Virus record (IMG/VR): IMGVR_UViG_3300044640_001495
Span: 124,001-188,000 of that record
Length of the DNA stretch: 64,000 nucleotides
Direction: 5' to 3' (one strand)
The notes under the pieces were generated by a model. It had not been told where the DNA came from and searched no databases. It saw only the letters and a program-made list of their open reading frames with translations. Of the stretch, positions 8,840-56,245 are shown one piece after another (the stretch's first letter is position 1; each line of letters opens with the position of its first letter). The position numbers and the translations under genes were made by a program.

Positions 8840-8842
8840 CTG

Positions 8843-13137: not shown

Positions 13138-13143
13138 TAAATA
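13136..13143 (+). promoter_or_regulatory. late promoter motif (AATAAATA)
   Basis: ATG 13148 4 nt downstream. Confidence 0.55.
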
Positions 13144-13147
13144 CATT

Positions 13148-13324: not shown

Positions 13325-13327
13325 ATA
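13320..13327 (+). promoter_or_regulatory. late promoter motif (GATAAATA)
   Basis: ATG 13332 4 nt downstream. Confidence 0.6.
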
Positions 13328-13331
13328 TAGT

Positions 13332-29476: not shown

Positions 29477-29477
29477 T
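29448..29477 (+). promoter_or_regulatory. sigma70-type promoter for queE
   Basis: TTGACA-N18-TATAAT; ATG 5 nt after -10. Confidence 0.8.
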
Positions 29478-29482
29478 ATACT

Positions 29483-36120: not shown

Positions 36121-37433
36121 AACGCACAATAGAAATTATTAACGAAATAAGTCCTAGCTTTTGTGCCGCAAAGTGGTACAATGCTACTATATGGTTAGGC
36201 AACGGACGAACAGCCAGCTGTCATTTGCCACCTGCTCATACTATACCCATAGCTGAAATCAAACGAAACCCGTCTGCTCTACACAATACCGTCTTTAAGA
36301 AGGACCGCCGATTAGAAATGCTAATAGGTGAGCGATGTGACGAGTGCGCTTATTGCTGGACTGTTGAGGATAATGCAGCACCTGATGTATATAGTGATCG
36401 AGTTTATAAGACTAGGATTTATGAAGAAGAAGAAATACTTCAGCTGGCTAAATTAGATCCTGGATCAGATGTTGACCCAAAAACTTTAGAGATCAGTTTT
36501 GATAATTTATGTAATTTAAGTTGTAGTTATTGTAATGCAGAGTTCAGTACTACTTGGGCTAGTGATATTAAGGTTAATGGTCCGTACATTGAATTAAAAA
36601 CATCAGGTGGTGGTGCGTTTCAAAATGCCGGGGAACATGCGTTACCTTACGGGATTAAAAATGAAAACAATCCCTACATCGAAGCGTTCTTTACATGGTT
36701 TCATGCTAGCCTTAAAAATAATTTACAAGAACTAAGAATCACCGGGGGTGAGCCTACTCGTAGTCCATCATTTTGGAAATTGTTAGACGAATGCGAAGGT
36801 ACAAATTTTGATTTTGCTGTTAACAGTAATCTTATAATGGATCAAGTAAAGTTAAATCAACTTATTAGTGCTAGTAAAAAGTTTAAGAAATTTGATCTAT
36901 ATACCAGCGGTGAAGGCTACGGGGCCCACGGAGAGTTTATTCGTCATGGGTTAGACTATACATTATGGCGTAACAACTTAATACAATTTGCCAAAGAAGG
37001 TCAATATAATATGATACATGTTATGATGACTATTAGTGCTCTAAGCATTTGGACCGTAACAGAGTTTATGACAGATATGTTAGAGCTACGTAAACAATTT
37101 GGTGGCCATCAGTTCCATATGAGTCTTAATTTAGTACGCTTTCCTAGTTTTCAAAACTTAAACGTATTACCTGAACACTTAAAACAAACACAAGCGGCCA
37201 AGATTGAAACTTGGCTAAGTAGTGTTGTTGGGCTAAGTCCTGCCGAAGCTAATCAAATAGAGAGAATAGCTGTGTATCTTCGAAACGTTGATCGTAGTCA
37301 AGAAGATACCGACAGCCAAAACAATAAGGTGCATGATTTAAAAAGTTTTACACAACAATATGCTGATAGAAAAAATATCACATTAGCTAGGGTATTCCCA
37401 ACAGAATTTATAGAATGGTTTAACACAATATGA
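36105..37433 (+). CDS. radical SAM protein with N-terminal twitch/SPASM-like Cys cluster
   Basis: FCAAKW...SCH, CAYC; CNLSCSYC; TGGEP; paralog of 34786. Confidence 0.9.
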   Translation: MSTNVKRTIEIINEISPSFCAAKWYNATIWLGNGRTASCHLPPAHTIPIAEIKRNPSALHNTVFKKDRRLEMLIGERCDECAYCWTVEDNAAPDVYSDRVYKTRIYEEEEILQLAKLDPGSDVDPKTLEISFDNLCNLSCSYCNAEFSTTWASDIKVNGPYIELKTSGGGAFQNAGEHALPYGIKNENNPYIEAFFTWFHASLKNNLQELRITGGEPTRSPSFWKLLDECEGTNFDFAVNSNLIMDQVKLNQLISASKKFKKFDLYTSGEGYGAHGEFIRHGLDYTLWRNNLIQFAKEGQYNMIHVMMTISALSIWTVTEFMTDMLELRKQFGGHQFHMSLNLVRFPSFQNLNVLPEHLKQTQAAKIETWLSSVVGLSPAEANQIERIAVYLRNVDRSQEDTDSQNNKVHDLKSFTQQYADRKNITLARVFPTEFIEWFNTI

Positions 37434-38644
37434 GCGAAGACAAATTTTGTATAGTGCCATGGATACATCTTAATACAGAACCTAACGGTCGTGTTAAGCC
37501 TTGTTGTGCGTATCTTGGACAAGATTTTGGAAACTTAAAAGATACTACACTAGAAGAAATATGGAATAACGAACATACTAAATCTATGCGTAGAAGCTTT
37601 TTAGAAAATAAAATTCCAGAAGGATGTCTAACCTGTACTAAAAAAGAAGACAGCGGTGGTGTAAGCTATAGAATGGCGGTTACTGAAAGATTCAGCCATC
37701 ATATTGAAAAAGCTAAAAGTAACACATTGCCCGACGGTACTTATGAAACGTTTGAAATAATTTTTTGGGATTTTAGATTCAGCAATATCTGTAACTTTAA
37801 ATGTCGTATGTGCGGACATGGTAGTAGTAGTTCTTGGTTTGACGACTTTACACCTGAAGAAAAGAAAACTAAGGTAAAGTTCCTTGACAGTGCGTATTAT
37901 GGAACTAATTTAATGAAATATGTTGATCAGTTTATTGACGATGTTGAAGAAATCTATTTTGCTGGCGGTGAACCATTACTTATGGCCGAACACTATCAGA
38001 TACTAGATAAGCTAATTGCCAAAGAACGATATGATGTATTTTTGCGTTACAACACCAATATGAGTACTATCAAGTATAAAGATTACGACCTGGTTGATAT
38101 CTGGAAACGATTCAAAGATGTTAGAATTTTTGCAAGTATTGACGGCATTGATGAAAATGCAGAGTACAGTAGATCTGGAACTGACTGGCCTAGAGTAGAA
38201 GAAAACTTAGTCCGTTTATCACAATCAAATGTTGATTATGTAGTATCAACTACTATAAACATTCTCACAGTTTTTAATTTTACTAAACTAGTTGATCGAC
38301 TAATAGAATTAAAAATGTCGACTAGGAAAGTACTAGTAAGTCACGTTAACTGGCCTAAGCACTATATGTCGTCAATTTTGCCCGAAGAGCTAAAAGATCA
38401 AATACGTTTACAACTGGATCAACATTTAGAAAAAATAACGCTGGCCGTAACCGAAGAAGAAAGTCGATGGTTAGCTAACCTATACAACGAAATTAAATTT
38501 TATTTAATCTCAACAACATCAACAGAAGAAACCACGACCTTACAACAGCGATTTAAAAGAGATACTATTAAGTTAGACCGTATTAGAAAAGAAGATATAA
38601 GAACGGCTGTACCAGAATTAGCCGAATGGTTTGATACATTATGA
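37430..38644 (+). CDS. radical SAM protein with N-terminal twitch/SPASM-like Cys cluster
   Basis: FCIVPWIH...PCC, CLTC; CNFKCRMC; AGGEP. Confidence 0.9.
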   Translation: MSEDKFCIVPWIHLNTEPNGRVKPCCAYLGQDFGNLKDTTLEEIWNNEHTKSMRRSFLENKIPEGCLTCTKKEDSGGVSYRMAVTERFSHHIEKAKSNTLPDGTYETFEIIFWDFRFSNICNFKCRMCGHGSSSSWFDDFTPEEKKTKVKFLDSAYYGTNLMKYVDQFIDDVEEIYFAGGEPLLMAEHYQILDKLIAKERYDVFLRYNTNMSTIKYKDYDLVDIWKRFKDVRIFASIDGIDENAEYSRSGTDWPRVEENLVRLSQSNVDYVVSTTINILTVFNFTKLVDRLIELKMSTRKVLVSHVNWPKHYMSSILPEELKDQIRLQLDQHLEKITLAVTEEESRWLANLYNEIKFYLISTTSTEETTTLQQRFKRDTIKLDRIRKEDIRTAVPELAEWFDTL

Positions 38645-39849
38645 GTGATAAATTTATTTGTGATTTTCCCTGGATTCATTTAAGTGTGTTTCCACAGGGC
38701 AACTGTACTGTATGCTGTGTGGCTAAACATTCGGGTAAGGGCAACGGACATAGTTGGAACAGAGTCAGTGAGGATAAAACTAAAACTATAACAGTTATGA
38801 ATAGTTCTATACCAGAGATTGTTAACTGCGATAATTATAAAACTATTAGACTAGATATGTTAGCAGGCAAGGTACCGACTGCATGTGAGGGGTGCCATCA
38901 AATTGAACAGGCTGGTGGAAAAAGTAAACGACAGCAAGAAACTACTCGAAATTTAGATCATGCGGCATTGACCTCAGTTGACGGTTCTATCAAGACAGAT
39001 CTTCGTCACATTGAATTACGATTAGGAAATTTTTGTAATTTAAAATGTCGAAGCTGTAACGCAGACTCTAGTACAAGCTGGATTCAAGATTACTATAAAT
39101 TAAAAGATACAGTCAAGTTAGCTAGTGGTTATCATTGGATTAAAAGTAATCCTGATTTTAGTTTTGATTGGGTAGACGATGAATCTTTTTACAACAGATT
39201 AACAGAATTTGCTCCTAATCTAGAACAAATACATATAAGTGGTGGCGAACCATTCCTTGTACCTACTCACTTTAAACTATTAGAAAAATTAGTGCGAGAT
39301 GGTAAAACAGATATCGCTATTCACTACCATACAAATTTAAATTATAAATGGGATAAAATTACTCCAGCATTGGATCTATTGACTAAATTTAAAGAAGTAC
39401 ATATTAGTTTCAGCATTGATGATGTTGGAGAGCGCAACACTTATATTAGAAGTTTAAGCGATTGGGATTTAACCATTAGTAACTTAAAATTATTTTTAAA
39501 TAATTACAAATTCATTTATCGTGTAACTCAAACTGTCAGCGTCTATAATTTTATGTATGTTGAAGAATTAGAAAGGTATTTAGCCAACAATAAAATACGT
39601 ATTAGAGTAGGTTTAAATCATGTTCAGAGCCCAGACTACTTATCAGCTAATATATTATCTAAACAAATGCGACAAGATAAAATTAATTCACTATACGGTA
39701 TTATTGATCGACGCAATTGGGAAGATCTTTATGGCCATTACTATACTCCAAAAGACAACGGACAGTGGGAATACTTTAAATATTTTACAGAAAAAATTGA
39801 TACTGTGCGTAACGAAGATTTAAATAGTATTTTTCCAAAACTAGCATGA
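38641..39849 (+). CDS. radical SAM protein with N-terminal twitch/SPASM-like Cys cluster
   Basis: ICDFPWIH...VCC, CEGC; CNLKCRSC; SGGEP. Confidence 0.9.
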   Translation: MSDKFICDFPWIHLSVFPQGNCTVCCVAKHSGKGNGHSWNRVSEDKTKTITVMNSSIPEIVNCDNYKTIRLDMLAGKVPTACEGCHQIEQAGGKSKRQQETTRNLDHAALTSVDGSIKTDLRHIELRLGNFCNLKCRSCNADSSTSWIQDYYKLKDTVKLASGYHWIKSNPDFSFDWVDDESFYNRLTEFAPNLEQIHISGGEPFLVPTHFKLLEKLVRDGKTDIAIHYHTNLNYKWDKITPALDLLTKFKEVHISFSIDDVGERNTYIRSLSDWDLTISNLKLFLNNYKFIYRVTQTVSVYNFMYVEELERYLANNKIRIRVGLNHVQSPDYLSANILSKQMRQDKINSLYGIIDRRNWEDLYGHYYTPKDNGQWEYFKYFTEKIDTVRNEDLNSIFPKLA

Positions 39850-40646
39850 AATTTATTTTTTTAAAATCGGGCGACTATTTAGAATTAGAACCCAACAACA
39901 CTCCTATAGCATCTGTTTGGTTTGAAAGCATTTTTTCTAAAAAAATGAATATGAGTTATTTTGCTAGAGATACTTCGTTTATAACTCGTTCTAACGAGAC
40001 TATTAATAATCTAAATACTGCAATTGATATAGTTAATAAGTTTGCTGTAGAAAAAAATCTACCTCAAATCATGTTTGATAAAATTGTTGGTATTGATCAA
40101 CAATGGCTCAATGCGTCACATAAAAAATGGGTATTGCACACTGACAGATTAAAGAATATAGTTAATGGCGACGATACAAAACAAAACTATCCCGGCTTTG
40201 TGAAATCTTGGCAAAATATCAATTTATACATTCATTCTTTAGAATATTATTATTCTGTTTATTTTACTAATACAAAAGGAGCATATTTAGAAAATATTGA
40301 TATTAAAATACAGCCGGAAGATTGCGAATACTCACAACACGATCTAATTTTAAGATTTGACGATTTAGGAAAACATCAGTATGACCAATGGATTACTGGA
40401 AGCGCAGTTGATGAAGAAACTAGCAATTACAAAACAATTTCGGCTAGATTTGAATATGCATTTAATCCGCAATTAAATAAAGGAATTCTTCCTAATCCAG
40501 CATATATAGAGTGGTGTAATCAAAATAATTTACAAGTTATGCCACCGTGGATTATTTTAGGAAACTTTAAAAAGAATAAATGGGAAATTAAACAACTCAT
40601 ACATCAAAATTTATCTCGAGGATTAGAAGTAGGATTTGAATTATGA
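39846..40646 (+). CDS. hypothetical protein
   Basis: 266-aa ORF coupled to rSAM array. Confidence 0.8.
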   Translation: MKFIFLKSGDYLELEPNNTPIASVWFESIFSKKMNMSYFARDTSFITRSNETINNLNTAIDIVNKFAVEKNLPQIMFDKIVGIDQQWLNASHKKWVLHTDRLKNIVNGDDTKQNYPGFVKSWQNINLYIHSLEYYYSVYFTNTKGAYLENIDIKIQPEDCEYSQHDLILRFDDLGKHQYDQWITGSAVDEETSNYKTISARFEYAFNPQLNKGILPNPAYIEWCNQNNLQVMPPWIILGNFKKNKWEIKQLIHQNLSRGLEVGFEL

Positions 40647-41506
40647 AAATTTATGTAAATGGAGATAGTTTTACTGCTGGCGACGGATTGTCTGATCCAG
40701 AAGTTTTTCCAGATTTGTATCCAGGGCATCATTCTTGCGACATAGAATTTGACGTAGCATGGTGTAATAAAAGGCATGCAATGCTAGATAAAAATCTTGA
40801 TTTACACAATCACTGGCAAATTAATAATAAGAAATATGTGTGGTCTACAATATTAGGAGAGCTAGTTAATACTATGTTAGTTAATGACAGCGTTACTGTA
40901 GTTAATGGTGCCATTGGCGGATCATGTATGACAGGCATATCAACTAGAACTATTGCCTATCTTGAATCATTAAGAAGTCGAGCAGACTTGCCAGATCATG
41001 TTTTCATAGGCTTAACAAGCATTGGAAGATTAGGTTGGTATCACGAAGATACACAAGATATTGGTAAAATTTTTAATTGGGTTAAATCGACTATTCCAGG
41101 ATTTCATTATCGAGGACATGAAAGTAAACATAAAAAATTGTTTGAAACTATTTGGACAACACTCAGTGATGAAGAACTGCTTATTAATTATCTAAAAGAA
41201 TGTTTACAAATTAAAAATTATGTCAAGAGAAGAATTGGACGAGATCCTATTTTCTTAAACACTGTGGGTGAATTTTGGCAATACAAAGAAATAGTCAATA
41301 ACTCTAAAAATCAATGGCTTCGAATGCTTTGGTTTGATTTATTAGAATTTGATAAGATTAACAATCGATGGTTCAATAAAGGAGCGTTTGAACAAATGAC
41401 TGCGTGTGGACACGTACTTCCGCCTGGTCATGCTGAATATGCTAGAGATTTAGCAAGAGAACATTTTGGATGGGGTAAAAATCCGGATGATAGGGATGCC
41501 AATTAA
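40643..41506 (+). CDS. SGNH/GDSL-like protein
   Basis: YVNGDSFTAG, NGAIGG, CGH..P.GH. Confidence 0.65.
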   Translation: MKIYVNGDSFTAGDGLSDPEVFPDLYPGHHSCDIEFDVAWCNKRHAMLDKNLDLHNHWQINNKKYVWSTILGELVNTMLVNDSVTVVNGAIGGSCMTGISTRTIAYLESLRSRADLPDHVFIGLTSIGRLGWYHEDTQDIGKIFNWVKSTIPGFHYRGHESKHKKLFETIWTTLSDEELLINYLKECLQIKNYVKRRIGRDPIFLNTVGEFWQYKEIVNNSKNQWLRMLWFDLLEFDKINNRWFNKGAFEQMTACGHVLPPGHAEYARDLAREHFGWGKNPDDRDAN

Positions 41507-41523: not shown

Positions 41524-43509
41524 TTATTTTTTTACTAAGGATTGAAATGTATTAAATTGCTTTTGCAACCATTCAAAATCGTTAATTTTTCTTAACTGAT
41601 CGGCATCAGCAATATTCAATAATCCGTACTGTTTTCCAGCTCGAGCTCCTGCTATACTATATTCTCCATAAAGTTTATCAGATCCAATACTACACCAAGT
41701 AATTAATCGATCTTCAGTTTCTTCTTGATATCCAGAATCAACAGGACGGCTGGCTAATTTTACACACTCTCTAAACGCAGATTTCCAAGTATTAAACGGA
41801 TCGGTATTAAAAACTGTTAGATTACTAACTTCTTTTATAACTTTAAATTTTTTGCTTATTGCCATAGTCATGTCAACACTAGACATGTCCATATTAATAG
41901 TTAAGTTTTTAGGCAATAATTTAACACCGCCATAGCCGTATGTTAATCCGTTGATAGGATTTTTGCTTAACCAAACATGAACAATATCTGTATCGTGTTT
42001 AGGTAGTAGTAGGTCAAATTGAAAATCATCTTCTATTATTGCATCACCGTCTACTACCCAAAACATTGGAGTTGTTGCTAATTTTGCGGCTGCAATGTGT
42101 GCTTGGTGAATACCTTTTACGCCGTGTACACGTTTGGCTCTCGGAAATTGATCAATTAATTTAGCAAAATTTTCATCTGCATTAGGTTCGTTATAAGATA
42201 TAAACACAATATCGTATAATTTTAATTTACTTGCCACAAGGTCATATTCTTTTTTTTCAATCAAATATCTATATTCAACTTCTCTTGCAGAAATAAGTCT
42301 TTTCTTCGATAATAACATTATACCGTTGTACTTAATTTCTTCAACATCAATATTTTTAAAGACGTGATTTATACTAAGCTCATACTTATTTTGGTATGGA
42401 AATTGAAGATCAAATTTAAAATCTGGCGCAGGTTCAACTTCCGGAGGAATCGCCCAAAACATATCTGTATCAGCTGTGTTAAGAGCATGTTCGTAATCAC
42501 TAAACGTATCGATTACAAATTTGTCGTACGGTTTATATTTGCTGGCCACTAGATCGTGTTCTTTTTTATCTATAAAAAATCTATGTTCAATCTCTTTCTT
42601 AGATACTGGCTTATTTGTAGAAAATAACACAACACCGTTAACGAACGATTCCTGATCGTTAGATATATTTTTAAACACGTGATTTTCGTTTCGATCATAG
42701 GAATTATGGTGACTAAAATAAGTTTCAAAAATTTGATCATTAATTATTTCAATATTTGGCCATACTCCCCAAAACATTGTTAAAGGTGAATTTTCTAATG
42801 CAGATCGATATTCTTCATAATTGTTAATAATAAAAATAGGATATGTTTTAGGTTTACTAGCTACTATATCAATTTCTTTTTTGTTAACATAAAATCTATG
42901 ATCAAATTCTTTTTTACTAATTTCTTTGTATTTTGAAAACAACGCTATTCCGTCAAAAAATTCTCCGTTTTTAAATACATGAGTTATGTTTCGATGAAAT
43001 GCATCGTATGTTGGAACATAATAATCAAAAAGAAAATTTTCGGCTACAACAACATCATCCCATACTGCCCAGAACATCGCTGTTGAAGATTGCTCTTTTG
43101 CATTTAAATAATCGTTGTATGTTTTTATATTATGAATTTCAAATTTCTTAGGAGTTGATGCAATTACATCCATCTCCTTTTTGTTCATAAAAAATCTATG
43201 ATCAAATTCTTTTTGTGTAGTATTGGCTGTTTTAGGAAATAGATTTATTCCGTCAAATGTTGTTCCGTTTAACCAAACGTGGGTATATTCTTCGTCCCAC
43301 TTAGATACTCTGTATTCAAAATTAAAATCGTCAGCTACAACAACATCATCCCATACGACCCAAAAGAATTTTGTAAATGCTTTCTTTTTAATGTCATCGA
43401 ACGATTTTACATTATCAATTTTTTGAGAAGATGGAAATTTAGAACGAAATTGTTTCCAATTTTGTTCATCAATAATATTTTTACTTACATAAAAAATATC
43501 ATAGACCAT
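41524..43509 (-). CDS. multi-repeat glycosyltransferase-like protein (four partial repeats plus C-terminal GT-A domain)
   Basis: C-terminal DIVFISY..E, AH..AA, WVVDGD (DxD), GYGGVKL; repeated MFW/HVFKN/HRF/KKE units. Confidence 0.75.
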   Translation of the reverse strand: MVYDIFYVSKNIIDEQNWKQFRSKFPSSQKIDNVKSFDDIKKKAFTKFFWVVWDDVVVADDFNFEYRVSKWDEEYTHVWLNGTTFDGINLFPKTANTTQKEFDHRFFMNKKEMDVIASTPKKFEIHNIKTYNDYLNAKEQSSTAMFWAVWDDVVVAENFLFDYYVPTYDAFHRNITHVFKNGEFFDGIALFSKYKEISKKEFDHRFYVNKKEIDIVASKPKTYPIFIINNYEEYRSALENSPLTMFWGVWPNIEIINDQIFETYFSHHNSYDRNENHVFKNISNDQESFVNGVVLFSTNKPVSKKEIEHRFFIDKKEHDLVASKYKPYDKFVIDTFSDYEHALNTADTDMFWAIPPEVEPAPDFKFDLQFPYQNKYELSINHVFKNIDVEEIKYNGIMLLSKKRLISAREVEYRYLIEKKEYDLVASKLKLYDIVFISYNEPNADENFAKLIDQFPRAKRVHGVKGIHQAHIAAAKLATTPMFWVVDGDAIIEDDFQFDLLLPKHDTDIVHVWLSKNPINGLTYGYGGVKLLPKNLTINMDMSSVDMTMAISKKFKVIKEVSNLTVFNTDPFNTWKSAFRECVKLASRPVDSGYQEETEDRLITWCSIGSDKLYGEYSIAGARAGKQYGLLNIADADQLRKINDFEWLQKQFNTFQSLVKK

Positions 43510-44410
43510 CAGTGGTCCTCATATATGTATTTGTTAATTTAATAGTTTCTTCGTACAAATCTAAAGTATATTTGCTCTGTTGACTATCTAGATAGGGATA
43601 ATCAAAACCTAGTTCTAATTTAATTTTTTCACCTAATGATTTAATTTCATCATCTAGACCATCACCGCCTACTTCTTCAAATGGGCGGCCATATTGATTC
43701 CAAATACCTTTAAGGATTTCAAAGTCTCGAACCTCTACATAATTCCAGTCGGTACAGTTTGCTAACCAAGTGCCTAATCTAGCACCATATATAGCATAAA
43801 GTCCGTTTTCTTCATGAGCACCAACTGTTGACCACATACGTAATCTATGCAAATTGTGCCACCAAACACGTTCGCTAATCTCTTGTGGTGACACTTTAAC
43901 TCCATCGAGTAAGGTCATTTTAACGCCTTCACGAAATCCTGCTCTCCATGCTTGAAAAGGACTTCCGGTAATATCAGTATCACTATAACATTCTTTAAAT
44001 TGACGATACCCATCTTCCCAACAAAAGTCTACTTGAGCGCGATCGCTTTCACTAGCTTCATGGGTTTTCATATTGAGAATAAAATCTCGTTTCCATATTT
44101 TAAGCCCGCCATTACCGTAGAGTAAGCCATTAAGTTTGTTTTTTCCTAGCCAACTATATACCTGTATCTTAGGATTACTTGTATCGATGTCTAGATTAAA
44201 AAATTTAGGATTAACTATATTATCAGCGTCAACCGTAATAACCCATTCAGTTTCACTTAACTCAGCTGCTGCCTTATGTGCAGCATCACTACCCTTCACC
44301 CCGTGAACTCGTTTAGCCCAAGGAAGTTTATTACATAAATCAGCATAATGCTTATCTGCATTGGGTTCGTCATAACTTAAAAATACAATGTCAAGTTCTA
44401 TTGTTTTCAT
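43499..44410 (-). CDS. GT-A fold glycosyltransferase
   Basis: DIVFLSYDEP, VHGVKG..AH, TVDAD (DxD), YGNGGLK. Confidence 0.78.
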   Translation of the reverse strand: MKTIELDIVFLSYDEPNADKHYADLCNKLPWAKRVHGVKGSDAAHKAAAELSETEWVITVDADNIVNPKFFNLDIDTSNPKIQVYSWLGKNKLNGLLYGNGGLKIWKRDFILNMKTHEASESDRAQVDFCWEDGYRQFKECYSDTDITGSPFQAWRAGFREGVKMTLLDGVKVSPQEISERVWWHNLHRLRMWSTVGAHEENGLYAIYGARLGTWLANCTDWNYVEVRDFEILKGIWNQYGRPFEEVGGDGLDDEIKSLGEKIKLELGFDYPYLDSQQSKYTLDLYEETIKLTNTYMRTTDGL

Positions 44411-45000
44411 ATTGTTTCAAATATATATTTGTCAAAAATTCGCCTTGTATAAACACTAAATCTATTTGGCAAATCTAATGTAAATAATTTTGTATTTTCT
44501 GTAATGTCGCCTGCCCTAATGCTTAACATATGAAGGAGGACATTGGGGTCGTTGTAATCAGTTACTAAAAAAATCATTTCAGTTGCACCGTCCCAAATAA
44601 TATTATTTGAGTATTTGTCGCTCATTGAAAATATTAATGTACTATTTTTTGTATCATGTGAAATTGTGATATCAGGATCTTGCATATTTGACCACTTTTT
44701 ATCTATTATTCTATGCAAGATGTCATCGATCTTTATTAGACTATGGGTGGAAAATTTGTTTAATTTAACTAATTTCTTAGTTGGTAAATCAACCCTATAA
44801 GAAAATAGATTTTCCTCTCCTGTAGAAACTGCTGTGGCAATTTCTTCATCAATTTTTATATTATTTGTATTATCAAATACCGCATGAGAAGGATATATTC
44901 CAATTAAAGATCCGTCATCTTTAAATGTTGCATAGTATTCGACGGTTTGATTGACTGGTAATTTAATCCACTCGTCAAAGTCCATTAATTCTTGTTCCAT
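44407..45000 (-). CDS. hypothetical protein
   Basis: 197 aa, coupled inside GT operon. Confidence 0.8.
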   Translation of the reverse strand: MEQELMDFDEWIKLPVNQTVEYYATFKDDGSLIGIYPSHAVFDNTNNIKIDEEIATAVSTGEENLFSYRVDLPTKKLVKLNKFSTHSLIKIDDILHRIIDKKWSNMQDPDITISHDTKNSTLIFSMSDKYSNNIIWDGATEMIFLVTDYNDPNVLLHMLSIRAGDITENTKLFTLDLPNRFSVYTRRIFDKYIFETI

Positions 45001-45827
45001 GCAATCTCCTCTAACATACTAACTATTTCGTCATTAACTAGATCTTTTTCAACATAATGCACAATATTATATTGCTGATAATTTCCAATTTTTAAATTTC
45101 CCTGTGTATTAAAATAAAAACCTGCATGTTCAGTGACCCTTTCGGCAGTCCAGGGCCAATTTTGAATCATCGGTTTCATATGTACTATATTAGGAAACGC
45201 TAAATCATAACTTATAATATCACTTATATCTAAAATCTTTGCGCTTAGAGCGAATGCTTCATCTGTTCCAACAACTTTTGGTTTATGTTTAGTAAGATAT
45301 AAATTACTAAACTCTAAAGGGTTTTTTATAATATATCTACCTAAATTGAAAAATTCTGTTGCAAGCTCGGATCCTTGTTTAAAAAAAGTAAACATGGAAT
45401 ATAAATTAGGAAGATTGTTTTTTGTAAATGTTTTTCTATAAAAATCATTTATGATTGTTTCACCTCTATAGGTTAAGGCCTTTGGAGGAATGTATAATTC
45501 ACAATTTTCAATAAAGTAATCAATCCAATGGCTATGATCCCTAAGAAAAAGCATGTCTGCATCAAGGCATACTGTATTTTCAAAAGGAGATAGTTGATCC
45601 ATCCAGCTACGGCCATCCCAATGTGTTTCTTTATCCCAGGTAATTACATGATCAAAAACCCAAGGACTTTTTAAATTATTAACTAGCTGAGGTTTATCGA
45701 TTACTAAAGCAACTTTATTGTATCCTGGTTTCTGAGTATTTTTAATACTTAATGCAAGAGCATAGGCCAGTTTAAGATAGTCTATATTATCATTCGAAGC
45801 AACAAAAATTAAGTAACCAAAGTTCAT
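44985..45827 (-). CDS. GT8-like nucleotide-diphospho-sugar transferase
   Basis: A..LALSIK, TVCLDADMLF (DxD), TDEAF, HMK. Confidence 0.65.
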   Translation of the reverse strand: MNFGYLIFVASNDNIDYLKLAYALALSIKNTQKPGYNKVALVIDKPQLVNNLKSPWVFDHVITWDKETHWDGRSWMDQLSPFENTVCLDADMLFLRDHSHWIDYFIENCELYIPPKALTYRGETIINDFYRKTFTKNNLPNLYSMFTFFKQGSELATEFFNLGRYIIKNPLEFSNLYLTKHKPKVVGTDEAFALSAKILDISDIISYDLAFPNIVHMKPMIQNWPWTAERVTEHAGFYFNTQGNLKIGNYQQYNIVHYVEKDLVNDEIVSMLEEIAWNKN

Positions 45828-46684
45828 ATTAACTCCAGTAGTTTTTCTTTATTTCTAATAATACTTTGTTTGTTCATAACGTGAACATCAGAACCTTGTG
45901 TAGTTGCAGCCCAAAAATCTCCGCAATTAAGTGGTTTGTCAATTAGGAACGTTAGCCGATCTCCATTTACATCATGTAAAATATCTTTATCAAATACTGT
46001 TAGAATAGGAGGTAATGTATAAACAAACTCAGTTTCAAACCCGTTCATGATATGTTTGGCAACGCTAAATGAAATGTCGTTTCGATATTGCCTTGGGTCA
46101 AATCTAAATAGGTCGGCATAATATCTATAATTGTCTTTAATATAATCAACTAATTTAAAAAAGAATCTACTTTCTTCGTTTTTAGTAAACATTACAGTAG
46201 TGGCCCAAAACATATGAACTCCGGTTTCACTTACACGTTGATCTAATATACCGCTGCGGTCACCTGTTATATCATTCATAGAATGTCCTAACATCACACT
46301 ACTATCTGTGTTCCAGTACTCATTTAGTTTGTTAGAAAAGATTAAATAATCACTGTCAACTAACAGGGTTTGATCGTAAGGACTTAAATCCCAAACTGAA
46401 AATCTATTTGAATTTACAAAAGGAATTGTCTGGCTGTAAAAACCATCATGAAGTTTTCTTGTATTTTTTGTTCTAGGCTTTTCAATTTCAATAATCTTAT
46501 CAAAAATAGATTCGGCTCTAGCATACATCTCTGATTCTTTTAACCAAGCAATTGTCCATTTGTCTGTTATTAAACTAACTGGTAATCCCAAATGTTTTTT
46601 TGCTAGGCCGCCAGAAATTATACCCATTACACCATAATCTACTTCTGGGCCATTATGAGCAAAAATTAATACGCCTTTAGTCAT
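45824..46684 (-). CDS. GT8-like nucleotide-diphospho-sugar transferase
   Basis: SPYDQTLLVDSDY (DxD), RNDISF, HVMNK; paralogous to 44985. Confidence 0.65.
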   Translation of the reverse strand: MTKGVLIFAHNGPEVDYGVMGIISGGLAKKHLGLPVSLITDKWTIAWLKESEMYARAESIFDKIIEIEKPRTKNTRKLHDGFYSQTIPFVNSNRFSVWDLSPYDQTLLVDSDYLIFSNKLNEYWNTDSSVMLGHSMNDITGDRSGILDQRVSETGVHMFWATTVMFTKNEESRFFFKLVDYIKDNYRYYADLFRFDPRQYRNDISFSVAKHIMNGFETEFVYTLPPILTVFDKDILHDVNGDRLTFLIDKPLNCGDFWAATTQGSDVHVMNKQSIIRNKEKLLELI

Positions 46685-47031
46685 ATATTCAATAATTTTT
46701 CTACGGTTCTGCTAGATTTAATTTTTTCGTATTCTTCGTGATATTCGTAGGTGGCAGTAAAATACCTATCTAGAATTTCATCTCGAAATATTTGTAGGTC
46801 TGGAATTAAAATTGGGTTTTCATTTTGATCAATTAAGGGAACATTTTCTGTTCTGTCTTGATCAATTAGCATTTGAACAAAAACTAATAGTGTTCTATCA
46901 ATCTTAAATATACCGCCGGAGTGGCCGTAAGTCAATTTACCCTCAATTTTTTCTTTAAGGGTTTTTCTTTGAATTGCTAGGGTTTGTCTATAATTAGAAA
47001 AATCTAAGGCAGCTTTTAGACGGTCGTCCAT
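46681..47031 (-). CDS. hypothetical protein (weakly DUF4376/fibre-assembly-like)
   Basis: 116 aa; GGIFKID...LID.N.NPI pattern; GGAG SD. Confidence 0.7.
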   Translation of the reverse strand: MDDRLKAALDFSNYRQTLAIQRKTLKEKIEGKLTYGHSGGIFKIDRTLLVFVQMLIDQDRTENVPLIDQNENPILIPDLQIFRDEILDRYFTATYEYHEEYEKIKSSRTVEKLLNI

Positions 47032-47056
47032 GGTATCTCCTATAAAACACGCACAT

Positions 47057-47064
47057 TATTTATA
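47057..47064 (-). promoter_or_regulatory. perfect T4 late promoter TATAAATA
   Basis: Reverse complement of TATTTATA, intergenic, upstream of GT operon. Confidence 0.75.
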
Positions 47065-47088: not shown

Positions 47089-48000
47089 TTATGAACCAGA
47101 AATTGCGCTCAAAGAAGACGACGAGGGGCCTACAGTGGTAAATGTCCCACTTGGTTGTAAAAATCCAGAAGGACGAACCTGATCAACTGTTAGAGTAAGC
47201 GTACCGTCAACTAAATCTCCAGGAGGAATTGCCGGTGTTCCGCCTCCTGGCACTGGATCAGTGTATGCATCTAACCACGTTATTCTAAAATTAACAATGT
47301 TTGCTGTTCCTAACAAGTTATTAGAAACATTACAAGACGCTTCTAACCGCCATTTATTATTAGAATATGCCGAGCTACCTGAAATTTCAGCAAAAGTTTG
47401 AAAACTACTAGTTAAAGAAAAGAAATTAATTCCAGAGGGGCCACCTACAAATGCTTGAGCTCCTGCAGAATTCAATAAATTACTCCACGATGTATTTTGT
47501 GCTTCACCGTTGCCGCCAGTTCTAGTACTAGCGAATCGAATTTTTCCGCCGGCATTAAAGAAGAATCTTGCCTGTTCTGCTGTAGAAAATGTAACTGATG
47601 CTGTAGCACTAACTGATTGATACCACGAAGAAGTAAATGATGTGCTGTTGATTGCTTCTGTAACAAATTGTCCTGTACCTAGGTCAAATCTATTTGTAGT
47701 TGCTGTATCTGCAAAGGTATTGTATTGAAAATTAGGTTGGCTGGCACCAAATCTCACCACATCGCCTACAGCCACTGTGGTCAATGCGGCAGCTGATCCT
47801 GTTTGATGTAACAGCGCATTATAGATATCATATCTCAAGGCATCCCATTGAGTCTTTGTTACTGAATTTCCTGCTGCTACTAAAGAACTGAATGTGTTTT
47901 GTCCGTAACCAGAATTACCAGCTCCCGTGGCCATTACATTGAATATTTTTGTTCTGATTGTGTTATAATCAGTTGCAGAAATAAAATCACCGATTGCCAT
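47089..48000 (-). CDS. virion structural protein (tail/fibre-associated)
   Basis: 303 aa S/T/G-rich; follows fibre genes. Confidence 0.7.
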   Translation of the reverse strand: MAIGDFISATDYNTIRTKIFNVMATGAGNSGYGQNTFSSLVAAGNSVTKTQWDALRYDIYNALLHQTGSAAALTTVAVGDVVRFGASQPNFQYNTFADTATTNRFDLGTGQFVTEAINSTSFTSSWYQSVSATASVTFSTAEQARFFFNAGGKIRFASTRTGGNGEAQNTSWSNLLNSAGAQAFVGGPSGINFFSLTSSFQTFAEISGSSAYSNNKWRLEASCNVSNNLLGTANIVNFRITWLDAYTDPVPGGGTPAIPPGDLVDGTLTLTVDQVRPSGFLQPSGTFTTVGPSSSSLSAISGS

Positions 48001-48009: not shown

Positions 48010-49764
48010 TTATAATACCAATGCTTCAACTAGTTTGCGATCTAGGTCTGTGTTTGATTCTAATGCAATAGCAAACACATCGTTGTCCTGCGGTTCGGCT
48101 GCCACGGCATTGCCATTATTTGCAGCTACAAGACGTTGACCTTTTTTCACTGCTCCTGTAACATACACAGGCACACGCCCTTTGAGAGCAATATATGTTC
48201 CGCCTTCAAGATCTTTGTTCATCATAAATCCAGGATTGGCCGATACCACTCCTACAGCTCGGTCGCCATACTGTGCAGCGGTGACTTCTTTGTCTCCGCC
48301 TACTGCTACCACTGTGCCTACTTCATATTCTTTATCTGCTAGATATTTTTCAGCAAGATCTGCATATTGCGCTGCGGTTGCTGTGCCGTCGAAGGTATTG
48401 GCCAATAAATTTCCTGAACCATCTCTAGCTGCAATTGTGTTGGCTGTTTTTGTAGTCTTAGCAGACCTGTAATCGGGATCTGTGTCTACTGCTGCATCAT
48501 TTATCCTAGTTCTATCTGATTTATCTACAACCCCAATAAATCTAGTAGCAGTAATATTACCACTGCCATCTCTCAAAGCCACAGAAGTTGCCACTGCGCC
48601 AAGTTCTCCAACTAGACTGTTCAAAGTCAAAGCGTTGGTGGCTGTACCTGTGACTGAACCTATCACGTTGCCTGTGAGTGTTCCCGAGAAGCTGCCTGAG
48701 AATATTTTTGTAACCGCGGTATAGGCCACAGAATTGTCGTCAGCAAGTATATTACCTTTGTGTACACCTGTGGTATTTCCGGTTACATTACCAGTTAACG
48801 CACCTGTAAATGTGGTTGAATGCACGTTGGCCCATTTGGAAACAGCAGAACCAAGAGTAAAGAAATTGTCTGTACCTGGAATCATGCCGGTTGCGGTTAT
48901 AATGCCAACATTGCGAAGATCACTATCCGATACTCTTATTCTCAAGGTTATAGTGTTGCCTAATCTGTTTTCAATAATAGGTTCATCGCCGTTTTCAACA
49001 CGGATTCTTAAATCATTTTGATCGCCTACTGTAAGACCGGCATCGGCGAAAGCAATTGCATTGGTAAAGGATACCTCACCCAGTCTAACATATTCACTAG
49101 CAGGAAAGCCGCCTAATCTCAACGCATTACTTGCTGATCCCCAGAAATAATGATCTGTGGTTGTTACTCCGGTAGTTCCGTTAGTGTTAACTAAGTTGAC
49201 ACCTTTTTTGATCACCGAAAATCCTGTTATAGGATTTAAAACGCTGTTTAAGGTAAATGCATCTTTGCTGACGATTGATATTACATCACCGCCAGATTGA
49301 AATTTTACTATGGTATGATTGTTGTTGAGAGTGTCTTTGACTACCTGTGCTTGTACTGCTGATGCACCTAGATCTGGCAAGGTTTCAGGGCCAATTAATA
49401 CAAATTCAGTGCCAGTATAGGCATACAGTTGTTCGGCTCCGGTATCAAACCAAAAATCTCCGGCCTGCAATCCGCTAGGAGGAGTAGGTCCTATCTCTGC
49501 GCCGCTGGCTGTTCTAAATTTTGTGCCGTCGTAAAATCGTAGTTTTTTTAGGCCACTGTCATACCAAATTTGACCAGTTACTCTTTTTGGAGGGGCTGAT
49601 GTATTGGCAAAGTTTTCCAGCAAATGTAGGAAATTCTCGTTCTGTACTTCGCCGTAGCCAGCGTAATTTTTACCTACAAAACGCAAATCAGTGGTGGTAT
49701 CAATGGTACCGTCGTCGACAGAGACTAAGAACGTTCCATTAAATTTGTCTACTTGATATGCCAT
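48010..49764 (-). CDS. tail fibre protein
   Basis: Shared N-terminal GxNYxGYGE.QNENFL.LLENFA domain, G-x-L-T-G-N-V repeats, C-terminal AQYADLAEKY domain. Confidence 0.85.
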   Translation of the reverse strand: MAYQVDKFNGTFLVSVDDGTIDTTTDLRFVGKNYAGYGEVQNENFLHLLENFANTSAPPKRVTGQIWYDSGLKKLRFYDGTKFRTASGAEIGPTPPSGLQAGDFWFDTGAEQLYAYTGTEFVLIGPETLPDLGASAVQAQVVKDTLNNNHTIVKFQSGGDVISIVSKDAFTLNSVLNPITGFSVIKKGVNLVNTNGTTGVTTTDHYFWGSASNALRLGGFPASEYVRLGEVSFTNAIAFADAGLTVGDQNDLRIRVENGDEPIIENRLGNTITLRIRVSDSDLRNVGIITATGMIPGTDNFFTLGSAVSKWANVHSTTFTGALTGNVTGNTTGVHKGNILADDNSVAYTAVTKIFSGSFSGTLTGNVIGSVTGTATNALTLNSLVGELGAVATSVALRDGSGNITATRFIGVVDKSDRTRINDAAVDTDPDYRSAKTTKTANTIAARDGSGNLLANTFDGTATAAQYADLAEKYLADKEYEVGTVVAVGGDKEVTAAQYGDRAVGVVSANPGFMMNKDLEGGTYIALKGRVPVYVTGAVKKGQRLVAANNGNAVAAEPQDNDVFAIALESNTDLDRKLVEALVL

Positions 49765-49786
49765 TGATCAACTCCGTTGTAACTAT

Positions 49787-49794
49787 TATTTATC
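49787..49794 (-). promoter_or_regulatory. late promoter motif (GATAAATA)
   Basis: Intergenic, upstream of GGAG SD of 49764. Confidence 0.6.
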
Positions 49795-49808
49795 GTAAAT
49801 ACACCCAT

Positions 49809-51626
49809 TTAAACTCTGCCCACTGCTACTTCTATAACACCACTTACACCATCAAAATCAACTAGAGCTTTACCTATAATTGTACCTATTTGAGGATTAA
49901 TTGCTTTTCTAGCATATCCTTCGCCTGCACTCATTAGCATATCACCTTTAGATATTTTACCGCGGACCTTACAAGGGGCTCTACCCTGTAATGCAATGGC
50001 AACTACATAGTTACCACTACATTCGCTGTTCATTAGGTATGCAGGATCTGTTGAGACAATACCCGCTAGTCTATTTGTGCCGTCTTCTGCTAGAGTTACT
50101 TCAAACTCACCACCAAATTCAAGTACTGTACCTGGCTCATAATCTTGATCTGCTACATATTTTTCAGCAAGATCTGCGTATTGTGCAGCAGTGGCTGTAC
50201 CTACAAAAAAGTTGGCATGCACGTTGTTCCATTTTGCAGTGGATATTCCTAGATCGGTAGTAGCAGTATTTACTGGGATCATAGCTGGAGCATTGAGTCC
50301 CCCTAACGCCAATGCGGTAGCTGCATTTACCATAGAGATTGCAGCCGTACTTGACGGTTGCGTTGGATCAAGAATTGTGAAATGTATTCCAGAATTACGT
50401 GAATGTAATGTTGGTATTGTGGATGCGTCTAAATATATTCTCAAAGGCGCCACACTGGTGCTAGGTCCTCCGAGTGTAATGCCGGTTGCGCCAGCGACAT
50501 CTAGAGAAGATAGAGTTCCTACATTAGTAAGGTCGGAATCTACTATGTTGGTTGCCAATTGAGTGCCAGTCAATGTGTTGCCGTCTGCAGGTACTGTGAT
50601 ATTTGCACTACCGTCAAACAGTACTGTGTTGATTGTTCTTGCTGTTTGTAATTTTGTAGCTGTGAATGCATTACCGGATAAAGTGGCCCCTATAAATTCG
50701 TTGGCTGATACTATGTTAAAAGTACTAGTTCCACTGGCAGTGGTCACGTTACCTGAGACATTGCCAAGTAGATTAGCAGTGATTGTTCCTGCTGAAAAAT
50801 CTCCGGCACTATCTCTAGCCACAATTTTACCTATGACATTACTGGGGCTAGCATCCACACTCCAAGTAGTGGCTGTTGATCCATTAAAATTTGCACCTGT
50901 AAGATACGTGCCTCTTGATAATGTGTTTGTGGTGTTGGATGTTATGGTTATGTCTGTTTGGCCATCGAAATACACCCCGTTAATGAGTCTACCAGGATTC
51001 AATTTACTGGCAGATTCTGCATTTCCCACCAGTGAGCCTATTACTGGCCTAGCTGTTGAGATATTGGTTCCTGCCTGCAGGATTGAAAATCCAGGTATAG
51101 CGTTGGCATCATCAATGGTAAAGGCATCATCGACACATACCGCCAACACTGTGCCATCTACTACCACCTTGATAGCTGCATGTTCAGTGCCATTGCTATC
51201 CATAATTTTTTCAGCTAGAACTTTGGTTGTATCAAAACCTTCAATAGCTTCAGGTCCTATCAATTTCCAAAATCCAGAATCATATACAAAAAGTTGATCT
51301 GTGATATCTTTGTACCAAATGCCGCCGTCGAATCCTTCTGGTTCAGTGTCACTAATAACAGCAGATCCCACAGGAGTCCAGGCTGTACCATTATAAACAT
51401 TCAGTGCGCCAACATCGGTGTTATACCATGTTTGTCCTGTGATTGGTCTAGACGGTGGATTTTCATTGGCAAAATTTTCAAGCAAAAACAAAAAATTTTC
51501 ATTTTGTGTTTCACCATAGCCAGTGTAGTTTCTGCCAAGCAATCCTAGACTGGTTGAGGTATCTAGTGTGCCATCTTCTAGCACTACTAATTGCTGACCG
51601 CTAAATCTGTTTATGATATATGCCAT
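49809..51626 (-). CDS. tail fibre protein
   Basis: Same N-terminal domain, ARTINxVxFDG repeats, C-terminal AQYADLAEKY domain. Confidence 0.85.
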   Translation of the reverse strand: MAYIINRFSGQQLVVLEDGTLDTSTSLGLLGRNYTGYGETQNENFLFLLENFANENPPSRPITGQTWYNTDVGALNVYNGTAWTPVGSAVISDTEPEGFDGGIWYKDITDQLFVYDSGFWKLIGPEAIEGFDTTKVLAEKIMDSNGTEHAAIKVVVDGTVLAVCVDDAFTIDDANAIPGFSILQAGTNISTARPVIGSLVGNAESASKLNPGRLINGVYFDGQTDITITSNTTNTLSRGTYLTGANFNGSTATTWSVDASPSNVIGKIVARDSAGDFSAGTITANLLGNVSGNVTTASGTSTFNIVSANEFIGATLSGNAFTATKLQTARTINTVLFDGSANITVPADGNTLTGTQLATNIVDSDLTNVGTLSSLDVAGATGITLGGPSTSVAPLRIYLDASTIPTLHSRNSGIHFTILDPTQPSSTAAISMVNAATALALGGLNAPAMIPVNTATTDLGISTAKWNNVHANFFVGTATAAQYADLAEKYVADQDYEPGTVLEFGGEFEVTLAEDGTNRLAGIVSTDPAYLMNSECSGNYVVAIALQGRAPCKVRGKISKGDMLMSAGEGYARKAINPQIGTIIGKALVDFDGVSGVIEVAVGRV

Positions 51627-51652
51627 TTATCGCTCCGTTACATATTTAACCA

Positions 51653-53491: not shown

Positions 53492-53502
53492 TTGTTTTTA
53501 CC

Positions 53503-56237: not shown

Positions 56238-56245
56238 AGTAGTAT

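What the first reader, a model, noticed from the sequence alone, without database searches (positions are those of the whole stretch)
41524..47064. Late-promoter glycosyltransferase operon directly behind the tail fibre genes: candidate virion glycosylation system
Seen: the perfect TATAAATA (47064-57) heads six minus-strand genes joined by 4-16 nt overlaps: a small fibre-assembly-like ORF, two GT8-like genes, an unknown, a GT-A and a multi-repeat GT-A. They follow four S/T-rich fibres and face the rSAM/SGNH array. Established: DNA-modifying GTs are expressed early, and virion glycosylation is known in giant viruses and some actinophages. Inference: late, soluble GTs build a glycan on fibres or baseplate, with rSAM/SGNH enzymes supplying or tailoring sugars. 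This is the best candidate for an undescribed system here.
Basis: partly seen in the sequence, partly recalled or inferred. Interest (0 to 1): 0.85.

Follow-up and report, generated by a model that had tools for sequence, protein, structure and literature searches.

The report
Glycosyltransferase cassette behind phage tail fibres
A large environmental phage carries, right after its tail-fibre genes, a conserved six-gene cassette with four sugar-transferring enzymes from unannotated families, linked to unusual radical-SAM enzymes; it probably decorates virion proteins with sugars, but the target is unproven.

Summary
The sequence features are real. Six overlapping minus-strand genes (41524-47031) follow a TATAAATA at 47057-47064. 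No Pfam, PHROG or NCBIfam model names any of the six proteins. High-confidence structure models and profiles show four glycosyltransferase-fold proteins:
- two glycogenin-like (GT8-like) paralogues;
- two paralogues of an unclassified DxD GT-A family, one preceded by four degenerate repeats of its own core.

TATAAATA alone is not above chance. It belongs to a (G/T)ATAAATA motif whose 11 copies are all sense-oriented and lie just upstream of ORFs, including virion genes. The same motif precedes fibre genes in distant relatives.

The cassette sits directly behind the fibre cluster in Ralstonia jumbo phage RsoM2USA and in every metagenomic relative with enough sequence. It usually has an N-terminal-twitch radical SAM gene inside it.

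- at least six distant relatives have sigma70-consensus promoters in front of the cassette;
- near-identical fibres occur with diverged cassettes;
- a module of two GT-A genes plus a radical SAM gene occurs in Bdellovibrionales chromosomes without fibres;
- "SGNH" and "fibre-assembly-like" found no support.

Virion glycosylation is the best single reading (about 0.4) but is unproven. Host-envelope or DNA glycosylation remain open.

The parts
47057..47064 (-). TATAAATA, one instance of the phage's (G/T)ATAAATA promoter-like motif, 25 nt before the first start codon
   Evidence: The same motif sits before the orthologous gene in L086 and L062.
46681..47031 (-). g116: small conserved first gene of the cassette, function unknown
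   Evidence: Homologues at 25-62% identity head the cassette in 10 distant loci. No family or PDB match.
45824..46684 (-). g286: glycogenin-like (GT8-like) glycosyltransferase; D110-x-D112, H268 and K272 are invariant
   Evidence: AF2 model pLDDT 93. Foldseek top hits are glycogenin, GlyE, UGGT and AgtA. Invariant columns.
44985..45827 (-). g280: paralogue of g286, with a (D/E)-x-D motif
   Evidence: hhalign 99.8%, E 1.9e-30. The joint profile hits only glycogenin-1/2 in PDB, E 5.5e-7.
44407..45000 (-). g197: poorly conserved unknown ORF filling a variable slot
   Evidence: Found only in closer relatives, at 31-98% identity. The Atlas gives only unnamed viral clusters.
43499..44410 (-). g303: unclassified GT-A-fold DxD enzyme (near-invariant D61, invariant D63; H117/E118 near-invariant) with a helical C-terminal domain
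   Evidence: AF2 model pLDDT 95. Foldseek PDB top hit is PBCV-1 A64R, followed by other GT-A enzymes. Conservation. 1229 clusters at 50% identity.
42217..43503 (-). g661 N-terminal part: four degenerate repeats of the GT-A core; the DxD position reads WDD, WDD, WPN, PPE
41527..42216 (-). g661 C-terminal domain: complete paralogue of g303 (DGD motif)
   Evidence: 38% identity over 240 aa, E 3e-39. In relatives it is a stand-alone gene of about 230 aa.
34786..39849 (+). Four paralogous N-terminal-twitch radical SAM genes (34786-36120, 36105-37433, 37430-38644, 38641-39849), probable partners of the cassette
   Evidence: NCBIfam NF033640, E 5e-81 to 2e-114, above the cut-off. Each has CxxxCxxC plus N-terminal cysteines. 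In relatives one copy lies inside the cassette.
39846..41506 (+).
47089..48000 (-). f303: Ser/Thr-rich (24%) conserved ORF directly upstream of the cassette; candidate virion protein or acceptor
   Evidence: Syntenic in relatives.
48010..55575 (-). Four tail-fibre-like paralogues (584, 605, 612, 690 aa) with a shared N-terminal domain
   Evidence: PHROG tail-fibre families and a Peptidase_G2/IMC domain. A GATAAATA lies at 49787-49793.

Best explanation
The cassette is one transcription unit. It encodes four soluble, metal-dependent (DxD) sugar-nucleotide glycosyltransferases: two glycogenin-like GT8-type enzymes and two members of an unannotated GT-A family. Two small proteins of unknown role complete it.

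The cassette is a fixed part of the virion and host-recognition gene block of a widespread lineage of large environmental myophages. It works together with N-terminal-twitch radical SAM enzymes.

Most likely the radical SAM enzymes make or tailor an unusual sugar, either as the nucleotide sugar or after transfer. The four transferases then build a short mixed oligosaccharide on a phage-encoded protein made at the same time. The candidates are the Ser/Thr-rich fibre or baseplate proteins encoded directly upstream. That would be virion glycosylation.

Shown: the enzyme folds, the catalytic motifs, the operon structure, the synteny and the promoter-motif class.

Inferred: the sugar chemistry, the acceptor and the timing.
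For: - Folds and motifs.
- The cassette proteins have no transmembrane-like segment and are acidic, pI 4.8-5.8.
- The nearest solved structures are mostly protein-directed transferases: PBCV-1 A64R, SunS/ThuS, glycogenin, GlyE, UGGT and Skp1 AgtA. The mycobacteriophage Che8 glycosyltransferase is among the viral hits.
- The cassette directly follows the fibre cluster on the same strand, with no terminator-like site between them.
- This order holds in RsoM2USA and in 16 distinct distant phage contigs.
- It also holds in 18 of 18 loci that were fetched through the unrelated f219 gene and have at least 2.4 kb beyond the f303 homologue.
- The (G/T)ATAAATA motif precedes a virion structural gene (162-692), f219 and f584 in the window. 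It precedes fibre genes in 10 distant loci.
- The cassette is conserved across phages from soil, freshwater and marine samples. One is a Ralstonia phage; others are contigs binned with Bacteroidota and Alphaproteobacteria. By inference this fits a conserved phage-encoded acceptor better than hypervariable host glycans.
- Fusion of the g303-type domain to a GT-B transferase (P0245) supports a role in multi-step glycan assembly.
Against: - There are no data on virion glycans.
- Structural similarity is modest (TM 0.3-0.5) and cannot identify an acceptor.
- In L083, L084, L087, L091, L094 and L114 the cassette is preceded by TTGACA-type sigma70 promoters, while the neighbouring fibre genes keep the late-type motif. 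Late timing is therefore not a conserved property.
- L041-L044 have fibres 91-97% identical to the window's, but cassette proteins only 43-79% identical and a different radical SAM complement.
- The module of g303, the g661 C-terminal domain and a radical SAM gene occurs in Bdellovibrionales chromosomes without fibres.
- g303 homologues sit in ordinary glycosyltransferase clusters of Rhodobacteraceae.
- One relative (L083) has the cassette without any radical SAM gene nearby.
Confidence: 0.4

Rival explanations
1. Host-envelope remodelling. The transferases act at the inner face of the membrane on LPS core, O-unit or capsule intermediates. This changes the cell surface, for example to block superinfection or to stop progeny being trapped on debris.
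For: - GT8 is a classic LPS-core family (general knowledge).
- GT8 and radical SAM cassettes among the tail-fibre genes of pelagimyophages have been interpreted this way (PMC7029224).
- Sigma70-consensus promoters stand before the cassette in at least six relatives.
- Cellular g303 homologues sit next to GT1 and GT28-like genes.
Against: - No membrane protein, flippase, polymerase or Gtr-type partner is in the cassette, and no hydrophobic segments are present.
- The window's copy carries the late-type motif.
- The same four-enzyme set is kept in phages of very different habitats and presumably different hosts, whose surface glycans differ.
Confidence: 0.22
2. DNA hypermodification. The enzymes, with radical SAM help, attach and elaborate sugars on modified bases of the phage genome to evade restriction.
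For: - Multi-enzyme DNA glycosylation by phages is established (cited in PMC12619734).
- DNA is an acceptor common to all hosts, which fits the wide conservation.
- Some relatives have early-type promoters.
- RsoM2USA is reported to encode two thymidylate-synthase-family genes, which is the usual source of hydroxymethyl pyrimidines.
- In KVP40, distant radical SAM homologues lie near a GT1-like gene and a QueC-like gene in a non-structural region.
Against: - The cassette sits inside the virion gene block rather than with nucleotide metabolism.
- The window's copy has the late-type motif.
- All cassette proteins are acidic.
- The nearest structures are not DNA transferases.
- No hydroxymethylase was seen in this 64 kb window, although most of the genome is unseen.
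Confidence: 0.12
3. A self-contained glycan, glycopeptide or small-molecule pathway. The module of two GT-A genes plus a radical SAM gene makes a product whose acceptor is neither virion, envelope nor DNA. Examples are a glycosylated peptide or metabolite, or self-glucosylation as in glycogenin. In phages this module is extended by two GT8-like enzymes.
For: - The three-gene module stands alone in Bdellovibrionales.
- SunS/ThuS peptide S-glycosyltransferases are among the structural neighbours.
- Glycogenin is self-glucosylating (general knowledge).
- The cassette and the fibres evolve independently.
Against: - No precursor-peptide-like ORF, protease or exporter is in the cassette.
- The fixed position behind the fibres is then unexplained.
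Confidence: 0.14

Closest known systems
Mycobacteriophage virion glycosylation (Che8, Corndog, Myrna; Freeman et al. 2023, cited in PMC12619734)
   Same: Phage-encoded GT-A-type transferases lie next to structural genes. The Che8 glycosyltransferase Q855A2 is a structural neighbour of g303.
   Different: - The hosts are actinobacteria.
- The enzyme families are different, annotated ones, and no radical SAM partner is known there.
- The acceptors there (capsid and tail-tube C-termini) are demonstrated; here nothing is.
PBCV-1 A64R and chlorovirus capsid glycosylation
   Same: A soluble viral DxD GT-A enzyme that glycosylates a virion protein. It is the best PDB match of g303 (E 2.8e-6, probability 1.0).
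   Different: - It is a virus of eukaryotes.
- The match covers only the N-terminal 190 or so residues, with TM 0.29/0.38 and 16% identity.
- The helical C-domain of g303 is unmatched.
GT8 family: glycogenin, and GlyE of serine-rich-repeat adhesin glycosylation
   Same: GT-A fold, a DxD motif and a C-terminal His/Lys motif. Profile match to glycogenin at E 5.5e-7 and fold match at E 2e-7.
   Different: - No member reaches any Pfam GT8 score, even at E<=1.
- The sequence match covers only the N-terminal half.
- The canonical HxxGxxKPW motif is replaced by HxMNK.
Host recognition cluster of pelagimyophages and cyanomyophages (PMC7029224)
   Same: Glycosyltransferases (GT8 is the commonest) and radical SAM cassettes are interspersed with tail-fibre genes of T4-like aquatic phages.
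   Different: - That region is described as hypervariable; here the cassette is a fixed core element.
- The cultured pelagiphage records gave no tblastn match to g303 or g286.
- Function there is also only inferred.
NCBIfam NF033640, twitch domain-containing radical SAM protein (N_Twi_rSAM)
   Same: All four plus-strand radical SAM proteins are full-length members, well above the cut-off.
   Different: The family itself has no assigned reaction. The partnership with the two GT-A families was not found in the papers searched.
T4 late promoter TATAAATA
   Same: The octamer is identical. There is no -35 element, and the motif is used before virion genes.
   Different: - The phage's own consensus is GATAAATA (8 of 11).
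- No gp55/gp33 homologue was looked for.
- Several copies sit only 4-5 nt before an ATG.

Membership tests
GT8 (CAZy) / Pfam Glyco_transf_8 | GT-A fold close to glycogenin or LgtC | tested here: met
   The g286 model (pLDDT 93) has glycogenin as top hit, E 1.9e-7, TM 0.44-0.52.
GT8 (CAZy) / Pfam Glyco_transf_8 | Sequence score above the curated family threshold | tested here: not met
   No Pfam hit at E<=0.01 for g286 or g280. None of 38 family members hits PF01501, even at E<=1. Only a custom profile reaches glycogenin, and only over the N-terminal half.
GT8 (CAZy) / Pfam Glyco_transf_8 | DxD metal and nucleotide-sugar motif plus a C-terminal His | tested here: met
   D110, D112 and H268 are invariant in the g286 family. 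D91 and H257 are invariant in g280, whose first acidic residue is D or E in 15 of 17. Equivalence to the glycogenin ligands is inferred, not superposed.
GT-A fold, GT2-like glycosyltransferase (g303 and the g661 C-terminal domain) | Rossmann-like GT-A fold with DxD | tested here: met
   Model pLDDT 95. The listed Foldseek PDB hits are GT-A glycosyltransferases or related nucleotidyltransferases. D63 is invariant and D61 near-invariant.
GT-A fold, GT2-like glycosyltransferase (g303 and the g661 C-terminal domain) | Membership of Pfam GT2 models | tested here: not met
   Best E-value is 0.1 for g303 itself. 13 of 66 relatives give sub-threshold PF00535 hits, the best at 0.0011. The family is unclassified.
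NCBIfam NF033640 N_Twi_rSAM | Full-length score above the 170-bit cut-off, a CxxxCxxC motif and an N-terminal Cys cluster | tested here: met
   Scores are 273-383 bits. Motifs lie at residues 121-143, and each protein has 4-7 Cys upstream of the CxxxCxxC motif.
T4-type late promoter | TATAAATA-like element recurring upstream of late (virion) genes, in sense orientation | tested here: met
   11 of 11 copies are sense and 10 lie within 30 nt of a start. The motif precedes the virion structural gene at 162, f219 and f584. It precedes fibre genes in 10 relatives.
T4-type late promoter | Dependence on a gp55-type late sigma factor and late timing | not testable with these tools
   No expression data exist.
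Phage virion glycosylation system | Glycosyltransferase genes embedded in or adjoining the structural gene block | tested here: met
Phage virion glycosylation system | Glycan covalently attached to virion proteins | not testable with these tools
   This needs virions. The RsoM2USA proteomics paper reports no glycan analysis.
Phage virion glycosylation system | Enzyme set co-varies with the presumed acceptor proteins | tested here: not met
   L041-L044 have fibres 91-97% identical but cassette proteins 43-79% identical. L009-L013 show the reverse.
   No hit in Pfam, NCBIfam, PHROGs or PDB.

The most novel reading that the evidence does not exclude
The pairing of two unclassified GT-A paralogues with an N-terminal-twitch radical SAM enzyme is a new, widespread glycoconjugate-building system. 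It is shared by Bdellovibrionales and a large lineage of aquatic and soil jumbo phages. Radical chemistry would create a previously unseen sugar or linkage. The phages have extended the system with two glycogenin-like enzymes to coat their tail fibres. This would be the first virion glycosylation system in phages of Gram-negative hosts and the first reaction assigned to NF033640.
Probability: 0.15. Interest if true: 0.85.

Novelty: new variant of a known kind. Interest (0 to 1): 0.58.

Why it matters
- The g303 family alone has more than 8000 metagenomic sequences and 1229 clusters at 50% identity, yet no family model or name.
- Its constant partner, the N-terminal-twitch radical SAM family, has no known reaction.
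- Glycans on tail fibres would affect host recognition, enzyme resistance and antibody recognition of an abundant group of large environmental phages. They would extend virion glycosylation beyond actinophages and giant viruses.
- RsoM2USA is a cultured phage with the cassette, so the question can be tested directly.
- If the target is instead DNA or the host envelope, the cassette still defines new enzyme families with a testable radical SAM and sugar chemistry.

Tried and rejected
- Direct Pfam and PHROG scans of all six proteins, an NCBIfam scan of the four GT-fold proteins, and single-sequence PDB searches of three of them gave nothing. Only alignments and structure models were informative.
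- Megablast of the region against phage records found no match.
I rebuilt it without that row.
- The Atlas searches returned only unnamed viral clusters. A 0.70-score hit of f303 to a radical-SAM-target repeat family is below the lead threshold and was dropped.
- A profile of g116 against PDB gave nothing.
- The 'SGNH' label was rejected.
- I suspected a 7-deazaguanine module around the QueE-like gene at 29483. Its neighbours are not Que genes; one is a 5'-3' exonuclease.
- I considered that the window belongs to the 'moraphages', which have four core glycosyltransferase orthogroups (PMC12619734). I could not test this without their sequences. Their reported kinship with Lak/ERM phages does not obviously fit the RsoM2USA-like genes here.
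- The consensus scans found fewer sigma70-like and terminator-like sites than in shuffled sequence in 33-52 kb, and no terminator between f303 and g116 or at the convergent junction.
- The C-terminal Ser-rich tail of f303 is conserved as a sequence segment. I do not count it as evidence for an acceptor site.


Full report
**What is there.** The minus strand between 41524 and 47031 carries six ORFs of 116, 286, 280, 197, 303 and 661 aa. Their ends overlap by 4, 4, 16, 4 and 11 nt. A 57-nt gap separates the first ORF from the preceding ORF. The gap holds TATAAATA at 47064-47057, then an AGGAG and the ATG 25 nt after the motif. No terminator-like site lies between the upstream ORF and the cassette, or at the 17-nt junction with the converging plus-strand genes. 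The region is AT-richer (32% G+C) than the rest of the window (about 40%).

**The enzymes.** None of the six proteins matches a Pfam or PHROG model at E<=0.01, and the four GT-fold proteins match no NCBIfam model. Single-sequence searches of PDB with g303, g286 and g280 were empty. Alignments and models were needed.

All are unnamed.
  - A 66-sequence alignment shows an invariant D63 and near-invariant D61 (a DxD motif). It also shows E15, R34, a YGNGG loop, H117/E118 and an RxGxREG motif.
  - The AlphaFold model has pLDDT 95.
  - Its best PDB match is PBCV-1 A64R, the chlorovirus capsid-glycosylating enzyme (E 2.8e-6, probability 1.0). WrtF, SunS/ThuS, chondroitin polymerase and SpsA follow, all GT-A enzymes.
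  - The match covers only the N-terminal 190 or so residues (TM 0.29/0.38). The helical C-terminal half is unmatched.
  - Thirteen of 66 relatives give sub-threshold Pfam GT2 hits.
- *g661.* The C-terminal 230 residues of the 661-aa protein are a paralogue of g303 (38% identity, E 3e-39). Its first 430 residues are four copies (about 100-120 aa each) of the GT-A core. In them the DxD position reads WDD, WDD, WPN and PPE. Probably only the last copy is catalytic.
- *g286 and g280.* These are paralogues (hhalign 99.8%, E 1.9e-30).
  - Their joint profile hits only glycogenin-1 and -2 in PDB (E 5.5e-7, N-terminal half).
  - The g286 model (pLDDT 93) matches glycogenin, GlyE, UGGT and the Skp1 galactosyltransferase (E about 2e-7, TM 0.4-0.5).
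  - D110, D112, H268 and K272 are invariant.
- *Common properties.* All four proteins lack hydrophobic segments and are acidic.

None of the proteins passes a curated family threshold.

**The promoter.** The exact octamer occurs once in 64 kb, where shuffles give about 6. It proves nothing alone.

- The core ATAAATA is under-represented (11 copies against 23.4 expected). All 11 copies lie on the coding strand, and 10 lie within 30 nt upstream of an ORF start. Eight read GATAAATA.
- Genes behind the motif include a PHROG 'virion structural protein' (162-692), f219 and the fibre gene f584.
- In distant relatives the same motif precedes fibre genes or f219 in 10 loci.
- Two perfect sigma70-type promoters (TTGAC[AG]-N17-TATAAT) stand before other genes of the window. 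The phage thus has two promoter classes, as T4 does. The cassette carries the virion-gene class.
- The motif is kept before g116 in L086 and L062.
- However, L083, L084, L087, L091, L094 and L114 have TTGACA-type -35 elements with TATAAT-like -10 boxes in that position, while their fibre genes keep the late-type motif. Late timing is plausible for this window but is not a conserved property of the cassette.

**Context and conservation.**

- Upstream on the same strand lie a 2579-aa ORF, f219, four paralogous tail-fibre-like proteins and the Ser/Thr-rich f303. The four fibre-like proteins have PHROG tail-fibre hits and a shared N-terminal domain, and one has an intramolecular-chaperone domain.
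- The only cultured phage with homologues is Ralstonia jumbo phage RsoM2USA. There ORF354-348 repeat the order g116, g286, g280, a small ORF, g303, a radical SAM gene, and a stand-alone g661 C-domain. They follow a fibre-like ORF, the sheath gene and a 2541-aa structural protein.
- Sixteen further distinct contigs keep the same order. Most are phage contigs binned into bacterial or archaeal MAGs, with g303 at 42-74% identity.
- Loci fetched independently through f219 show the cassette behind the f303 homologue in 18 of 18 cases with at least 2.4 kb of sequence beyond it. The cassette is a core, fixed-position element, not a hypervariable island.

**Radical SAM partners.**

- The four converging plus-strand genes are all full-length members of NCBIfam NF033640, N-terminal-twitch radical SAM (273-383 bits against a cut-off of 170). 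They have CxxxCxxC motifs and N-terminal cysteines.
- In RsoM2USA and most relatives, one such gene lies inside the cassette between the two GT-A paralogues.
- The window's clade has expanded the set to four, inverted it, and added two orphan ORFs for which 'SGNH' finds no support.
- One relative (L083) has the cassette but no radical SAM gene.
- In Bdellovibrionales chromosomes the trio of a g303-like gene, a g661C-like gene and an N-twitch radical SAM gene stands alone, with no fibres or GT8-like genes.
- In Rhodobacteraceae a g303 homologue follows a GT1 gene near a GT28-like protein.
- One metagenomic protein fuses a GT-B domain to the g303-type domain.

**Interpretation.** It is well supported that the cassette glycosylates something, with radical-SAM-tailored chemistry. 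The acceptor is not established.

- *For a virion protein:* the fixed place behind the fibres; the promoter class; soluble enzymes whose nearest structures mostly act on proteins; and conservation across phages of very different habitats, which suits a phage-encoded acceptor better than host glycans.
- *Against:* the sigma70-type promoters in relatives; the cellular modules; and the lack of co-variation with fibres. L041-L044 have fibres 91-97% identical to the window's, but cassette proteins only 43-79% identical and one in-operon radical SAM gene. L009-L013 show the opposite pattern.
- *Published readings of comparable clusters:* GT8 and radical SAM cassettes in pelagimyophage host-recognition clusters were read as LPS O-chain modification (PMC7029224). 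A 2025 survey of large aquatic phages listed four core glycosyltransferase groups and left DNA, serotype or virion targets open (PMC12619734).
- *My estimates:* virion glycosylation about 0.4, host-envelope modification about 0.22, another glycoconjugate pathway about 0.14, DNA modification about 0.12.

**Novelty.** Virus-encoded virion glycosylation is known in chloroviruses, mimiviruses and mycobacteriophages. Glycosyltransferases beside fibre genes have been noticed before. Three things are new here:
- two abundant transferase families are defined that no library names;
- they have a constant partnership with an uncharacterised radical SAM family, in phages and in Bdellovibrionales;
- the cassette has core status behind the fibre cluster, and a cultured phage (RsoM2USA) carries it, so the question can be tested.

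Noticed in passing
window 8832-8845, 13321-13334, 56237-56249 (-), 13137-13151; also 4465-4502 and 29448-29485: Several promoter-like elements ((G/T)ATAAATA or TATAAT) end only 4-7 nt before an ATG. This suggests leaderless or near-leaderless transcripts in this phage.
   Followed up: partly
window 4465-4493 and 29448-29476 (+): Two perfect sigma70-type promoters (TTGAC[AG]-N17-TATAAT) form a second promoter class, distinct from the ATAAATA class.
   Followed up: partly
window 29483-30346 (+): A fifth radical SAM gene matches the PHROG 'QueE-like' family (E 2e-48). No other queuosine-pathway genes are beside it; a neighbour is a 5'-3' exonuclease.
   Followed up: partly
window 5851-8184 (+): A 777-aa ClpA/ClpB-type AAA+ chaperone gene is shared at about 43% identity with PA5oct-like and other jumbo phages.
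   Followed up: no
window 56246-63985 (-): A giant 2579-aa ORF lies upstream of the fibre block. RsoM2USA has a 2541-aa virion structural protein (ORF361) in the corresponding position.
   Followed up: no
window 9582-10763 (+): A 393-aa protein matches PHROG 'cytidyltransferase' families (E 3e-47). It may act in nucleotide or nucleotide-sugar metabolism, or in NAD salvage.
   Followed up: no
L041-L044 versus L009-L013 (IMG/VR relatives): There is mosaicism between the fibre block and the cassette. Nearly identical fibres occur with diverged cassettes, and the reverse. This implies recombination at or near the f303/g116 boundary.
   Followed up: partly
L083-L095, L099, L101, L112-L114, L142, L147 (genome contigs): Many clearly phage-like contigs with fibres plus the cassette are binned into MAGs. 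The MAGs are labelled Bifidobacterium, Rickettsiales, Neomarinimicrobiota, Haliscomenobacter, Fischerella and even Pacearchaeota. These are probably binning artefacts or host hints.
   Followed up: no
L243 (Vibrio phage KVP40 127268-146152): Distant radical SAM homologues in KVP40 sit in a non-structural region. One is two genes from a GT1-like protein (KVP40.0274-0272). Others are near QueC-like and NadV genes. This is another radical SAM and glycosyltransferase pairing of unknown function.
   Followed up: no
L164, L172, L181, L224 and others: An extra gene of about 1-1.4 kb is sometimes inserted between the f303 homologue and g116. That boundary is therefore an insertion hot spot.
   Followed up: no
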